Positions 28,057-32,258 of a DNA stretch of 64,000 nt are shown here, one piece after another. Both the position numbers and the translations under genes were made by a program. The stretch is from Adineta vaga (lineage: Eukaryota > Animalia > Rotifera). The stretch covers positions 9,486,001 to 9,550,000 of the forward strand of contig CP075493.1 of the NCBI GenBank assembly GCA_021613535.1, given 5' to 3'. The stretch's first letter is position 1, and every line of letters begins with the position of its first letter. The notes beneath the pieces are model-generated. The model ran no database searches, was not told the origin of the DNA, and was given only the letters and a program-made list of their open reading frames with translations.

Positions 28057-29879
28057 ATGTCTAAATTGTGTCTTCTACTATTGATTGCAAGTTTATGGTA
28101 TCCTACAATCATTGATGGAAAACGACGAGGTTGTTTGTTTTTATAGATAGATTCAAATGGATCGATTCATTTCTTTTTAGCAACATCTCAATCACAGCAT
28201 AATTTAGGTGATTTCTGTATGCCAGGAACATGTGCTAGTTTAAATTCAAATTGTAAACGCATTGGTGGAAATGCTTTTCGATGTGTTTGCAAAGAGCAAT
28301 ACATGGCAATAAATAAAACTCATTGTGGTTTGTACAAACTATTTTGTTTTTTGATGAATTCAAGAAGAACAACATTCCATCTGTTTGTTATAATAGTAAG
28401 AGTAATTAATGCATCGATTGATGCAGCGTGTGCATCATGTATCAAACGTAATGGAATCTGTTTGGATGAAAATGCGGATGATCGTATGGAGAAATGTTTT
28501 TGTCCAACAGATAATGATTTATGTAATGATCGACCAACAACTACAACAACATATCTCATACCGTTAACACAACCTTTGAGAAAAAAGTATTGATTGATAA
28601 ATCAATTTTTTTTTAATTTGAAAATAATAATAAAAAATATATTTGTTATAGTATAGCAGGTATGACACCATCGTTTTCAGGACGTATTTCGAAACAAGGT
28701 GATCTGTTACTTGGTTTATATGATGTAAATCAACAGCGATTAATTGATAATGGTGGTTCAGTTGTTATTGGTGATCGTTTATTTATTGAAATTAAATATC
28801 GAACTGGTTTGATAGATAATTTTCAAACGAAAGAATATCCTATTTTCCTTTTATTCTCTAGCTGATCAGATGCGTGATGGTCATCAAATCATAGCAGAAA
28901 ATTGTTCAATTGCTTCGAGTGTTTCCGATAATGAAATAAAATTAGAAAAAATTCAATTATTAACCAATCGTTGTCCATCAATCGATTCGCGTCTATCCAT
29001 ACGTTTTCAACGTATCGATCCATATCATATAAAAAGCACTATTTTTCAAATCAATAAATTTCAAACAACATCTATTGTTTATTTACGTTGTTCAGTAGCA
29101 ATTTGTTCTGGACAAATTGAAAAGTGTCTTGAAGTATCGATCATTATTCTTGATTAACATGTCTATTACGACATTTTTTTTCTTTTATTGTAGCGTTTAT
29201 GTCCAGAATCACGACGATCATTACAAAAAATGAATAATGCATCATCCATCAATTCAGCACCATTCGACTATGTCGATGAAGATAGTGCTAGTGTTGTGGC
29301 TTTAAAACGACGACAAGTTCGTCGAAATATGAATAATGATAATGATAATGATGATCAACAAAACAAAATATCAAGATTAATTACAGATTTAACGAAATCA
29401 TATGATTCGAATAATGATCATTTTGAAATTCGACAAGTACAACAACAATTTTCTATTGAAACACCATTACCTCAACCAGCAAATAAACATAAAACACCTT
29501 ACGGTAAACAATTCTTTTCGATATTTTTTCCTCTATATCTATCTATATAGAAACATTGTATGGTCGAACATCATTAGCAAGTCAAGGTGCTGTTGAACGA
29601 TCAACAGTTATTGTTGCTATATCAGTTATATTTATTATTGGTATATCCGTTTCCTTGTTTGTGATTTATCGTACATGTTATGTTGAATACGTTCAAAAAG
29701 TATATGGTTCAGCATCAATTGCCGGATTTGCTAATGGTCCTGAATCAGTTTATGGAGGATTACGAAGTACATCACAAGTGTGTCGTTACGATATGGGACG
29801 TCGATCTGAACAAAGATTTGATGAAAGTTTCTTTGTTAATAATGTTGAACCATTAGGAGCTTATCGAAGACAATATTAA
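28057..29879 (+). CDS. Type I membrane protein: signal peptide, two EGF-like modules, Thr-rich linker, ZP-C-like domain, furin sites, TM, cytoplasmic tail
   Basis: MSKLCLLLLIASLW; CMPGTC..C..FRCVC; LLLGLY..VVIGDRLFIEI; ENCSI..LLTNRCP..FQINKF..VYLRCSVAIC; KRRQVRR; TM VIVAISVIFIIGISVSLFVIY. Confidence 0.8.
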
Positions 29880-29978: not shown

Positions 29979-31157
29979 TTATTTCTTTGTTATAAATTCG
30001 TTTTGTTTTCTTTCGATTAAACGTATATCATATGCTTCTTCACCCTTCAATTATATGTATAGATTAAAATTGTTTAAGAATGAAATCAATTTACTTTGTT
30101 AGTTGATCGTATTTGGAATTGAATCTGTTGACCTTGTTCTAATTCTTGAAGATCATCTTGTAAAGAACGTGCATAAATGAAAACATTCTTTCCATTTGAA
30201 GTTCGACGTACAAAACCAAAGCCACTTTGCACCTTTTAGCATGTAAAACTTCCATCATTATTAGGTTCATTGATTTGTTCGACTTACATTCCATTGATTA
30301 ACAATTCCTGTTTCAAACTTATCTTCTTCGTTCATTGTCTGAAACGTACTTCTTTGATCTTCTATAAACATTGAGTTGTATGAAAACATAATCAAATGAT
30401 TAGAACTGATTGTTCGTACTCTTGTCATCTATTGAATTTGTATTTTTGATAATAGAAATATTTCTTGCTTCGATACCACGATCACTTATAGCTTCGAGAA
30501 AATCAACTTCCATACCTTCATGAACCAATTCTAAATCAGTTGGACGCATCCATCGACTATGCATGAAAATATCTGCTCCATCACTTTTTCTAGTAATGAA
30601 ACCATAGCCACGATTTTTTCTATGAATAAGAAAAGATATAATTGATGAGAATTCAACTTGTCTTGTCATATACACAAATTTTCGAATCACACCAATAGAA
30701 CGATCTTTTGTGAGAACTTTCAAATCTTTCACTGATTGGTCATTCGTGTTAACGATTTGACTTTTGACAATGACATCCTATATAGAGGAAAACGAGATAA
30801 ATGTAATAATAAAAACAGTTATAATTCTATAGAACTTACTCGTGCTTCAGGTCCTTTTTTTCCATCGGAAATGTGAAATTCTACTCGTTGTCCTTCCTAA
30901 AATAATGTTTAATGAAAAAAGGATGAGACTCATCTTCTCACCTCTAATGTTTTGAAACCAGTACCAAGAATTGATTGGAAATGTACAAATACATCTGTTC
31001 CATTACTATCACGTTTAATAAAACCAAAACCTTTATCTTTTGAGAATCGTTTAACAATTCCTGTATCTTTGGTGTTATTCACATCGTCTACGACTGATAA
31101 TAATCTTTTAAATTGTAAACGAACAAGATTCGGTCGTCTAAATAAAGACAAAAACAT
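29979..31157 (-). CDS. Protein with three tandem cold-shock domains and an N-terminal mitochondrial-type presequence
   Basis: CSD1 [33 protein letters not shown]|[15 protein letters not shown]; CSD2 [27 protein letters not shown]; CSD3 (missed by the ORF track) TGIVNQWN|[21 protein letters not shown]..|[10 protein letters not shown]. Splice phases are consistent. Confidence 0.88.
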
Positions 31158-31349
31158 CTGAAAAAGAACGAGGAATTCGAAACTATACGTCAGATTCATC
31201 TAATATATCATGAAATTCTTTTATAGGATAAGATTCGTTTACAGTGATTGTTTTTGTAGAGAATAGTATTGAAAAAAGAATTCTAAGATCACATCGATAT
31301 CAACGTTTCTTTATTTGTAATATAAAAATGTATTTGAAAGACTGTACTA

Positions 31350-32258
31350 CTATCGATTGAAAACATAAGATATGACAATAGATATTAAACTAGCTGAAAC
31401 AAACAAAACACCAGTATGATAAGTTATTTTCGACTGAAGACGTTCTTCACTTTGCTCATTTAATAATAAAATATCTTCATAAGCATCTTTTGATGATGAT
31501 GATGAACTTGTTAATTCTCTTTTCAATTCATTAATTGATACTTCTTGTTTAACAATCAAATCTTCATATAGTTTTTGTGATGCACTTGTTATATCACGAA
31601 ATTCTTTCATACGATAACGATTTGATAATGTTGCACCTATATAATAATAAACGAAATGAGATTGAACATATAGATATATACATATGAAAAGTCAGCAATA
31701 TTTACCAATCATTCCAGTTAGAGCACCAACTACTGAACCAATAATTGACCAATATTTCGTTCTTTCAACACGCATTTTTTCTTTCTCTTGACTTTCACGT
31801 AATGCTAATTGTAATGATGAAAAGAATCGTCGTTCAATCTCATCTTGTCTTTGTAATTCTAATTGAGTTGATTTTTCTTTCTTTACCAAATCATGTTCGC
31901 TTTTGAATAGTTCAAAATAGGCATCGTCACTTCGTGATAATTTTTCCATGTCGAATCGAATACGTGCTAATTCATTTTGAAGTTTCATTAGTTCATCGGA
32001 ATATGAACGACGTTCGATTTGAGTTTGTAAGAATTTACGTTCGGCCTACATAGAAAAAAAAAGAATAGATGTAGAGATCGTTGAAATATAAATATCTTAC
32101 AAATGAAGTTACATTACATCATTGACTGCACTTTGAGCTTGTTTGACTTCTTTGAGACCGACAAAATCTTCATAAACATCCAACCAACGATAGAGACGTG
32201 ATGACTGTTTTTCAGTTGTTAGTTTTGAAAAACGACGGAGAGTTATTCGTGCTAACAT
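31350..32258 (-). CDS. CCDC51: CCDC51 / mitochondrial potassium channel MITOK
   Basis: Presequence MLARITLRRFSK; YEDFVGLKEVKQAQ; RESQEKEKMRVERTKYWSIIGSVVGAL; second C-terminal TM. Confidence 0.88.

What the first reader, a model, noticed from the sequence alone, without database searches (positions are those of the whole stretch)
29979..31157. Triple bacterial-type cold-shock-domain protein with a mitochondrial-type presequence
Seen: three tandem CSDs (the third needs manual splicing), no Y-box tail or CCHC knuckles, and an Arg/Leu/Phe-rich N-terminus with no acidic residues ([21 protein letters not shown]). Knowledge: CSD1 ([31 protein letters not shown]) resembles bacterial CspA (VFVHFSAI..GFKTL.EGQ.V.F) more than animal YBX or Lin28. 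A mitochondrial CSD protein is known in trypanosomes (RBP16); I know of no such animal family. Inference: a horizontally acquired Csp was triplicated, gained introns and was retargeted as a mitochondrial RNA chaperone, possibly for cold or desiccation stress.
Basis: partly seen in the sequence, partly recalled or inferred. Interest (0 to 1): 0.8.

Follow-up and report, generated by a model that had tools for sequence, protein, structure and literature searches.

The report
Bdelloid rotifer triple cold-shock-domain gene
This is a real seven-exon rotifer gene for a protein with three bacterial-type cold-shock RNA-binding domains behind an N-terminus that looks like a mitochondrial import signal; the family was found only in bdelloid rotifers and probably came from bacteria, but neither the import nor the transfer is proven.

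Summary
On the minus strand, 31157..29979, lies a seven-exon gene with six GT-AG introns of 45-62 nt. It equals exon by exon the public Adineta vaga protein I4U23_003055 (284 aa). The protein has three Pfam CSD domains, no cysteine and no RGG or Y-box tail.

CSD1 is 57-70% identical to single-domain bacterial Csps at near-full coverage. Against solved structures it scores about 71 bits, versus 37 for YB-1, 30 for Lin28 and 27 for UNR.

Relatives with this architecture turned up only in bdelloids (Adineta, Rotaria, Didymodactylos) and rotifer-like environmental contigs. They form two paralog groups. All 39 rotifer domains form one clan (98/92) beside a bacterial Csp, apart from the genome's own YBX. 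An AU test cannot reject a rotifer+YBX grouping (p 0.32), so transfer is likely but not shown.

The N-terminus is basic, free of acidic residues and ends in a conserved (R/K)-x-(L/M)-S motif in 16 of 19 relatives. Every group-A copy has a splice acceptor directly before the ATG. A paralog's mRNA carries the bdelloid spliced leader.

The gene always sits just downstream of a CCDC51/MITOK-like gene. Mitochondrial import is predicted only, and a stress role is untested. The third domain seems to have arisen separately in the two groups. No RNA reads could be obtained.

The parts
29979..31157 (-). Whole coding region, seven exons, 284 aa. Equals the public A. vaga protein I4U23_003055 (P0158).
31095..31157 (-). 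Residues 1-21, [21 protein letters not shown]. Presequence-like: 5 basic and 0 acidic residues, ending in R-L-L|S, an R-3-type MPP cleavage motif.
   Evidence: The same pattern occurs in 16 of 19 relatives.
31158..31175 (-). Pyrimidine tract plus CAG (ttcctcgttctttttcag) directly abutting the ATG. Putative SL trans-splice acceptor.
   Evidence: Every group-A copy examined ends in 'cag' directly before the ATG.
31197..31199 (-). Upstream in-frame ATG. It lies before the acceptor, so it is probably in the outron and not used.
   Evidence: Orthologs start at MF....
30769..31070 (-). CSD1 (residues 30-94), split by introns I1 and I2. RNP1 KGFGFI and RNP2 VFVHF are intact.
   Evidence: 71 bits to bacterial Csps
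30451..30702 (-). CSD2 (residues 117-182), split by I3. RGYGFI and IFMHS motifs. A fast-evolving domain.
30018..30314 (-). CSD3 (residues 209-272), split by I5 and I6. SGFGFV and VFIYA motifs.
30897..30941 (-). Intron 1 (45 nt, GTGAGA..TTTTAG). Its position after 'TLE' recurs in three of the four group-A relatives' exon-1 read-through ORFs ('TLEV' in P0016, P0035, P0056; P0066 reads 'TLQV').
30778..30839 (-). Intron 2 (62 nt, GTAAGT..ATATAG), phase 0 after EAR|DV. Same position and phase as in the chromosome-4 paralog (EAK|DV).
30620..30673 (-). Intron 3 (54 nt)
30362..30419 (-). Intron 4 (58 nt)
30233..30287 (-). Intron 5 (55 nt)
30045..30094 (-). Intron 6 (50 nt)
31350..32258 (-). Upstream same-strand neighbour, CCDC51/MITOK/She9-Mdm33-like (name is a lead only). 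Conserved partner of the CSD gene.

Best explanation
This is a genuine nuclear gene of a bdelloid rotifer. The genome fits Adineta vaga: 100.8 Mb in 6 contigs, with a public A. vaga protein identical to the exons.

Its product has three parts:
- a roughly 21-residue basic N-terminal segment with the features of a mitochondrial presequence;
- three CspA-like cold-shock OB-fold domains;
- flexible linkers joining them.

The gene belongs to a family found here only in bdelloids. Group A is this gene on chromosome 1; group B is a paralog on chromosome 4.

Most likely history:
- A bacterial csp gene was acquired before the bdelloid radiation.
- The domain was multiplied inside the rotifer lineage.
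- The gene gained introns and a targeting N-terminus.
- Its mRNA is matured by spliced-leader trans-splicing at an acceptor that touches the ATG.

Most likely function: after import and cleavage at R-L-L|S, the three CSDs bind single-stranded mitochondrial RNA (possibly DNA) and act as a multivalent RNA chaperone or stabiliser.

Shown: gene structure, the three CSDs, bacterial-type similarity, bdelloid distribution among what was searched, a conserved N-terminal pattern, and conserved synteny.

Inferred: horizontal origin (about 0.65), mitochondrial import (about 0.6), chaperone role (about 0.5), stress link (about 0.15).
For: Structure and domains.

Same as the public A. vaga protein.

Not contamination: six spliceosomal introns, GC equal to the window (0.30), a 100-Mb six-contig assembly, and the same gene order in Adineta, Rotaria and five environmental lineages.

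Bacterial type:
- CSD1 is 57-70% identical to Csps of Pseudomonas, Nocardia, Bacillaceae, Ignavibacteria and others.
- PDB scores are 65-71 bits for bacterial Csps, against 37 for YB-1/YBX2, 30 for Lin28, 27 for UNR and 20 for CARHSP1.

Distribution: the best full-length relatives are all Adineta, Rotaria or Didymodactylos, or unnamed rotifer-like contigs. Actinobacterial 4xCSD proteins come next.

Tree:
- All 39 rotifer domains form one clan (98/92).
- Their sister is an Ignavibacteria Csp (98/83).
- The YBX-like clan is separate (100/99).
- The actinobacterial multi-CSD domains lie outside the rotifer clan (their own clan 95* in the quick tree; not a single clan in the careful tree).

N-terminus:
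- The first acidic residue falls at position 14-55 in 19 relatives.
- An (R/K)x(L/M)S motif sits at the boundary in 16 of 19.
- Hydrophobic moment is 0.59-0.90 against 0.47+/-0.13 in controls.
- AlphaFold2 leaves this segment disordered.

Start codon:
- Every group-A copy has an acceptor ending in 'cag' directly before the ATG.
- Group-B environmental mRNAs begin with CTTACCAAGAG, 20 nt before their ATG. This is the 3' end of the SL exon, present as 54 SL-gene copies in this genome.
- Bdelloids trans-splice more than 50% of their mRNAs (PMC1925144).

Neighbour: a CCDC51/mitochondrial-K-channel-like gene lies 20-550 nt upstream on the same strand in all lineages checked.
Against:
- No localisation predictor or experiment was available; the presequence call rests on simple sequence statistics.
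- The AU test does not reject a tree joining the rotifer clan to the YBX-like clan (p 0.32). With 68 alignment columns, resolving power is low.
- Non-bdelloid animals and other eukaryotes were sampled only through ranked database hits, not by direct genome searches.
- The A. vaga copy has degenerate RNP2 motifs in CSD2 (IFMHS) and CSD3 (VFIYA), where orthologs have FVHS and FVHA.
- One relative (P0016) has an acidic residue at position 14 and lacks the motif.
Confidence: 0.5

Rival explanations
1. Vertical descent. The family is an old eukaryotic or animal CSD lineage, for example a sister of Y-box CSDs. It kept a bacterial-like short loop and was lost or missed in other animals, so there was no horizontal transfer.
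For: The AU test cannot reject rotifer+YBX-like as one clan (p 0.32). CSDs are short and conserved. The gene has introns, host-like GC and old conserved synteny.
Against: CSD1 scores about twice as high against bacterial Csps as against any animal CSD and is 57-70% identical to them. In the free tree the clan sits beside a bacterial Csp, inside the bacterial polytomy. No non-bdelloid animal protein appeared among the 120 best full-length hits in 5.8 billion proteins.
Confidence: 0.2
2. Not mitochondrial. The basic N-terminus is only a disordered RNA-binding or other sorting extension, and the protein works in the cytosol or nucleus like UNR or Y-box proteins.
For: Localisation was not tested. 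Basic disordered tails are common in RNA-binding proteins. AlphaFold2 gives no helix for residues 1-27.
Against: Composition rather than sequence is conserved across both paralog groups. There is a sharp switch to acidic/polar residues right after a conserved (R/K)x(L/M)S motif. This pattern is typical of cleaved presequences (own knowledge of MPP R-3 sites). The constant partner gene is CCDC51-like, a mitochondrial inner-membrane protein (lead only).
Confidence: 0.3
3. Fusion protein. The CSD exons are cis-spliced to the upstream CCDC51-like gene, as annotated in Adineta steineri (P0003). That would remove the presequence.
For: P0003 is such a model. In the window an in-frame join is formally possible, from donor G|GT at 31411 to the AG at 31095-94 (read).
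Against: The upstream gene has its own stop codon in every lineage. The A. vaga and four Rotaria annotations start at MF.... The hypothetical intron would be 318 nt against the usual 45-62 nt, with a weak donor. An acceptor abuts the ATG in all copies.
Confidence: 0.07
4. Bacterial contamination or an assembly artefact.
For: The domain sequence is bacterial-like.
Against: Six GT-AG introns, GC of 30% like the rest of the window, flanking animal genes (CCDC51-like and ZP-domain), and the same locus in several rotifer genomes.
Confidence: 0.01

Closest known systems
Bacterial CspA/CspB cold-shock proteins (PF00313, single domain, about 67-70 aa)
   Same: Domain sequence: 57-70% identity for CSD1. 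RNP1/RNP2 motifs, a short beta3-beta4 loop and the five-strand OB barrel.
   Different: Three domains in one chain, an N-terminal targeting-like extension, six introns, and a eukaryotic nuclear gene with an SL-type acceptor.
Actinobacterial multi-CSD proteins (about 310 aa, four CSDs; Humibacillus, Cellulomonas, Terrabacter)
   Same: Tandem bacterial-type CSDs joined by linkers. They are the best non-rotifer full-length hits.
   Different: Their domains lie outside the rotifer clan (their own clan in the quick tree), so the repeat architecture arose independently. They have no presequence.
UNR/CSDE1 (animal multi-CSD protein)
   Same: Several CSDs act as a beads-on-a-string RNA binder.
   Different: UNR has five canonical plus non-canonical CSDs in about 800 aa and is cytoplasmic. 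Similarity is weak: 27 bits to CSD1, and at most 24 bits to CSD3. The genome has its own UNR-like genes elsewhere.
Y-box proteins and Lin28
   Same: They carry a CSD with RNP motifs.
   Different: YBX has a longer loop and a long charged tail; Lin28 has two CCHC knuckles. This protein has neither and no cysteine. A. vaga's own YBX forms a separate clan (100/99).
RBP16 of Trypanosoma brucei and the mitochondrial CSD proteins of Diplonema
   Same: Nuclear-encoded CSD proteins that work on RNA inside mitochondria. RBP16 as a mitochondrial CSD protein is my own knowledge; the seven CSD proteins of the Diplonema mitoproteome come from PMC12699882.
   Different: They have a single CSD, and RBP16 adds an RGG domain. 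They are Euglenozoa, not animals. No specific sequence relationship was tested, and import of the rotifer protein is only predicted.

Membership tests
Cold-shock domain (Pfam PF00313) | Score above the Pfam gathering cut-off (27 bits) | tested here: met
   173.7 bits in 3 stretches. Single exons score 51, 39 and 36 bits.
Cold-shock domain (Pfam PF00313) | Five-stranded beta-barrel (OB fold) | tested here: met
   The AlphaFold2 model has three sets of five strands at pLDDT about 90. This is a prediction only.
Cold-shock domain (Pfam PF00313) | RNP1 (K/R-G-F/Y-G-F-I/V) and RNP2 (V-F-V-H-F) nucleic-acid-binding motifs | tested here: met
   CSD1 has KGFGFI and VFVHF. CSD2 has RGYGFI and IFMHS. CSD3 has SGFGFV and VFIYA. 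RNP2 is partly degenerate in domains 2 and 3.
Bacterial CspA-type proteins | Higher similarity to bacterial Csps than to eukaryotic CSD classes; short beta3-beta4 loop | tested here: met
   71 versus 37 (YBX), 30 (Lin28) and 27 (UNR) bits. 57-70% identity.
Bacterial CspA-type proteins | Single-domain protein of about 70 aa encoded by an intronless bacterial gene | tested here: not met
   284 aa, three domains, six introns, in a rotifer chromosome.
Y-box proteins | CSD followed by a long C-terminal tail of alternating basic/acidic or RG-rich blocks | tested here: not met
   Only 12 residues follow CSD3, and there is no RGG.
Lin28 | CSD plus two CCHC zinc knuckles | tested here: not met
   No cysteine in the protein. 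Pfam reports no zf-CCHC.
UNR/CSDE1 | Five or more CSDs with CSDE1-type domains | tested here: not met
   Three CSDs. PF23456 (CSDE1) scores 19 bits, below its 27-bit cut-off.
Proteins with a cleavable mitochondrial presequence | N-terminal 15-60 residues that are net positive, lack acidic residues and can form an amphipathic helix | tested here: met
   Residues 1-21 have 5 K/R and 0 D/E, with maximum hydrophobic moment 0.72 against 0.47+/-0.13 in controls. The statistics are simple, not a trained predictor.
Proteins with a cleavable mitochondrial presequence | MPP cleavage motif (R-2 or R-3) at the end of the basic segment | tested here: met
   R18-L-L|S21, and the same (R/K)x(L/M)S motif in 16 of 19 relatives. 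The motif definition is from my own knowledge.
Proteins with a cleavable mitochondrial presequence | Actual import into mitochondria and processing | not testable with these tools
   Needs a localisation or proteomics experiment.
Horizontally acquired bdelloid genes | Best hits outside Metazoa much stronger than best metazoan hits (alien-index logic) | tested here: met
   On the PDB set, ln(2.3e-8/3.3e-19) is about 25 for CSD1 alone. For the full-length A. steineri ortholog used as query, the best non-rotifer hits are actinobacterial at about 1e-46. A same-database metazoan E-value was not obtained.
Horizontally acquired bdelloid genes | Phylogeny nests the gene within a non-metazoan clade with support that excludes animal homologs | tested here: inconclusive
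   The free tree gives a bacterial sister (98/83). The AU test does not reject rotifer+YBX-like (p 0.32).
Horizontally acquired bdelloid genes | Physically integrated in the host genome (introns, host neighbours) | tested here: met

The most novel reading that the evidence does not exclude
A bacterial cold-shock gene captured by the bdelloid ancestor was rebuilt into a multi-domain RNA chaperone of the mitochondrial matrix. It has been kept for the whole bdelloid radiation as the downstream gene of an operon-like pair, resolved by spliced-leader trans-splicing, with the mitochondrial inner-membrane gene CCDC51/MITOK. That would make it both the first dedicated mitochondrial CSD protein of an animal and a case of a foreign gene wired into organelle gene expression.
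Probability: 0.3. Interest if true: 0.7.

Novelty: new variant of a known kind. Interest (0 to 1): 0.55.

Why it matters
Bdelloid rotifers are the classic case of massive gene capture by an animal, but few captured genes have a worked-out cellular role. If this family is imported into mitochondria, it would show a bacterial RNA chaperone being re-aimed at the organelle. No dedicated CSD protein of that kind is known to me in animals; mitochondrial CSD proteins are known in trypanosomes and diplonemids.

The tight, conserved pairing with a CCDC51-like gene, and the acceptor that touches the start codon, also give a concrete locus at which to ask whether bdelloids have SL-resolved operons.

If the protein proves to be cytosolic, it is simply one more lineage-specific RNA-binding protein of foreign origin.

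Tried and rejected
No reads were laid, and I did not try another route.
- The look-up of encoding contigs found no record for P0158 itself.
- The metagenome scan gave only genomic group-A contigs, no spliced group-A transcript. Its other hits were ordinary bacterial Csps.
- Taxonomy of the unnamed multi-CSD representatives could not be obtained. They were left out of the careful trees.
- The A. vaga UNR-like exon fragments were dropped from the final tree. Their 3.4-unit branch was pulled into the group-B domain-3 clade with support 68/8, an artefact.
- Donor lineage: the sister is one Ignavibacteria MAG Csp, but the bacterial part of the tree is a polytomy. No donor is claimed.
- Import of a ready-made actinobacterial four-CSD gene was rejected, because those domains lie outside the rotifer clan and in the quick tree form their own clan.
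- Signal peptide or transmembrane reading of the N-terminus was rejected. The hydrophobic run is only six residues before RR.
- Literature: searches for cold-shock domain with bdelloid or Adineta found nothing on this family.
The spliced protein used was database entry P0158, returned.

Full report
**What is there.** The window is AT-rich (GC about 0.30 throughout). It belongs to an assembly of 100.8 Mb in six contigs.

On the minus strand between 31157 and 29979 I read a gene of seven exons and six GT-AG introns of 45-62 nt. A word search with the Adineta steineri ortholog returned 'hypothetical protein I4U23_003055 [Adineta vaga]', P0158, 284 aa. Each exon of the window translates to a consecutive piece of P0158. 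The exons sum to 855 nt, which is 284 codons plus the stop.

All work on the spliced protein used P0158.

**The domains.** Pfam CSD matches three separate exons at 1e-13, 6e-10 and 8e-9. It matches the whole protein at 6.7e-52 in three stretches. The domains lie at residues 30-94, 117-182 and 209-272.

AlphaFold2 with 12 family members gives three five-stranded barrels at pLDDT about 90. The N-terminus (1-27) and the linkers are disordered, and pTM is 0.33, so the protein is beads on a string. It has no cysteine and no RGG. That excludes Lin28-type knuckles and a Y-box or RBP16-type tail.

**What kind of CSD.**
- Against solved structures, complete CSD1 scores 65-71 bits with bacterial CspA, CspB, CspC and CspE.
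- It scores about 44-46 bits with two other CSD entries (2mqh, 8tg0) whose source organisms the output does not name.
- It scores 37 with YB-1/YBX2, 30 with Lin28B, 27 with Drosophila UNR, 23 with CSDE1 and 20 with CARHSP1.
- In 5.8 billion proteins, the closest near-full-length single-domain proteins are bacterial Csps of many phyla at 57-70% identity. Hits at 75-93% identity over 60-76% of the query are probably rotifer exon-1 fragments (those sharing ids's loci are).
- CSD2 and CSD3 are more diverged, but their best matches are also bacterial.

**Relatives.**
- A profile-free scan of 1.84 billion representatives and the word search found architecture-level relatives only in bdelloids: Adineta steineri, A. 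vaga, four Rotaria species and Didymodactylos carnosus. The remaining hits are unnamed metagenome or Logan contigs that look like rotifer DNA or mRNA.
- The next best full-length hits are actinobacterial proteins of about 310 aa with four CSDs.
- The family has two groups. Group A is this gene. Group B is a 349-aa paralog on chromosome 4 at 7.516 Mb, with long Ser/Gly/Phe-rich linkers.
- The genome also carries ordinary YBX and UNR-like genes. Separately it has two tandem single-CSD genes on chromosome 2 that are very bacterial-like.

**Tree.** I cut all domains with an HMM built from 90 single-domain Csps.
- In the careful IQ-TREE run (79 rows, 68 columns), all 39 rotifer-family domains form one clan (98/92).
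- Their sister is an Ignavibacteria Csp (98/83), inside an unresolved bacterial polytomy.
- The YBX-like clan is separate (100/99).
- The actinobacterial multi-CSD domains lie outside the rotifer clan. In the quick tree they form their own clan (95*); in the careful tree they fall into three sets within the polytomy.
- So the repeat architecture was not imported ready-made from that source.
- Within the rotifer clan, domain 3 of group A groups with domain 2 of group B and of P0007 (97/83). Group-B domain 3 is their sister (98/97). Group-A domain 2 is a long separate branch.
- Didymodactylos has two CSDs. Two environmental lineages, syntenic with group A, stop after two.
- The number of domains has therefore changed more than once, and 'one triplication' is too simple.
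- Limit: an AU test does not reject holding the rotifer and YBX-like clans together (p 0.32). The tree alone does not prove a bacterial origin.

**Introns.**
- The phase-0 intron right after CSD1 (EAR|DV) is shared with the group-B paralog (EAK|DV). The other positions differ between the two genes.
- Intron 1 after 'TLE' recurs in three of the four group-A relatives seen as read-through ORFs.
- This fits an intron-poor ancestor that gained introns over time, but it does not prove one.

**The N-terminus and the start codon.**
- The refutation test 'an upstream coding exon removes the presequence' was addressed indirectly.
- In the window, and in all group-A genomic copies examined (L037-L041, L043, L059-L063), a pyrimidine tract ending in CAG touches the ATG.
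- The upstream gene ends with its own stop codon 20-550 nt before that ATG.
- Two environmental mRNA contigs of a group-B ortholog start with CTTACCAAGAG, 20 nt before their ATG.
- That string, followed by GT, occurs 54 times in this genome in divergent pairs. It is preceded by TTATTACAA, as expected for SL RNA genes.
- Bdelloids put a 23-nt spliced leader on more than half of their mRNAs (PMC1925144).
- The in-frame ATG at 31199 lies upstream of the acceptor, so it is probably not used. Annotated orthologs all begin MF....
- One A. steineri model (P0003) fuses the two genes. I take this for an annotation artefact. An in-frame cis-splice is formally possible in the window, but it would need a weak donor and a 318-nt intron.

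**Is it a presequence?**
- In 19 family members, the stretch before CSD1 has 4-10 basic residues.
- The first acidic residue falls at position 14-55.
- The peak hydrophobic moment is 0.59-0.90, against 0.47+/-0.13 for internal control segments.
- In 16 of 19, an (R/K)-x-(L/M)-S motif sits exactly where the basic part gives way to an acidic or polar linker (alignment).
- That matches the R-3 cleavage pattern of the mitochondrial processing peptidase (my own knowledge).
- The sequence itself is poorly conserved between groups A and B, while these properties are conserved. This is how presequences behave.
- No trained predictor or experiment was available, so import stays a prediction at about 0.6.

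**Neighbourhood.**
- The constant upstream partner (window about 32258..31350) resembles CCDC51, the 'mitochondrial potassium channel', and She9/Mdm33. This rests on language-model features (0.90, a lead only).
- The order CCDC51-like -> CSD gene <- ZP-domain gene holds in Adineta, Rotaria and the environmental contigs.
- The tiny spacers and the acceptor at the ATG suggest an operon-like pair. That is circumstantial support for a shared mitochondrial role.

**Mechanism proposed.**
- The protein is made in the cytosol and imported through the presequence pathway.
- It is cut after L20.
- In the matrix it uses three CSDs on flexible linkers to hold single-stranded mitochondrial RNA and prevent or melt secondary structure.
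- This is what bacterial Csps do, and what RBP16 does for trypanosome mitochondrial RNAs.
- Steps shown: domains, motifs and architecture. Steps inferred: import, substrate and activity.
- A link to cold or desiccation has no support here.

**Novelty.** Searches of the paper library found nothing on this family. Databases call it 'hypothetical' or 'CSD domain-containing'. CSD proteins, multi-CSD proteins, mitochondrial CSD proteins of Euglenozoa and bdelloid gene capture are all known. The combination found here is a new variant.

Noticed in passing
window 31350-32258 (minus) with 31158-31349 spacer; also L037, L039-L041, L043, L059, L060, L061-L063: A CCDC51/MITOK/Mdm33-like gene lies directly upstream of the CSD gene on the same strand in every lineage checked. 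The distance from its stop to the CSD gene's ATG is only 20-45 nt in several lineages, and an acceptor touches the ATG. This looks like an SL-resolved operon pair.
   Followed up: partly
G000 C2:15537971-15538159 and C2:15540574-15540765 (L003, L004, L008, L009): Two tandem single-CSD genes score 99 and 108 bits to PF00313. They form their own pair (98/96) among bacterial Csps, apart from the triple-CSD clan. Each is preceded by an ORF with a hydrophobic, signal-peptide-like start (MGQMYALSFIVLIMALIVLAE...). This may be a separate acquisition.
   Followed up: partly
P0003 (Adineta steineri CAF0791491.1 / A0A814WSJ7): This public model fuses the CCDC51-like gene to the CSD gene and drops the presequence. 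It is probably a gene-prediction artefact caused by the tiny intergenic spacer.
   Followed up: partly
G000, e.g. C1:1639465-1639645 (L031, L032): Spliced-leader RNA genes: 54 copies of CTTACCAAGAG|GT, mostly in divergent pairs about 168 nt apart, with clusters on contigs 2 and 5.
   Followed up: partly
window 29230-29879 (plus): The end of a convergent gene whose product has a C-terminal membrane anchor. In the syntenic loci the gene at this place carries a Zona_pellucida domain.
   Followed up: no
L060 (ENA contig of 2.0 Mb): A syntenic ortholog lies in a genome stretch with 51% GC, far above the 27-33% of the other rotifer loci. The source organism is unknown.
   Followed up: no
L027 positions 775-785: This environmental mRNA contig of a family member (P0007) has a run of A that breaks the frame between CSD2 and CSD3. 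It is probably a sequencing or assembly error, so that protein also has three CSDs.
   Followed up: partly
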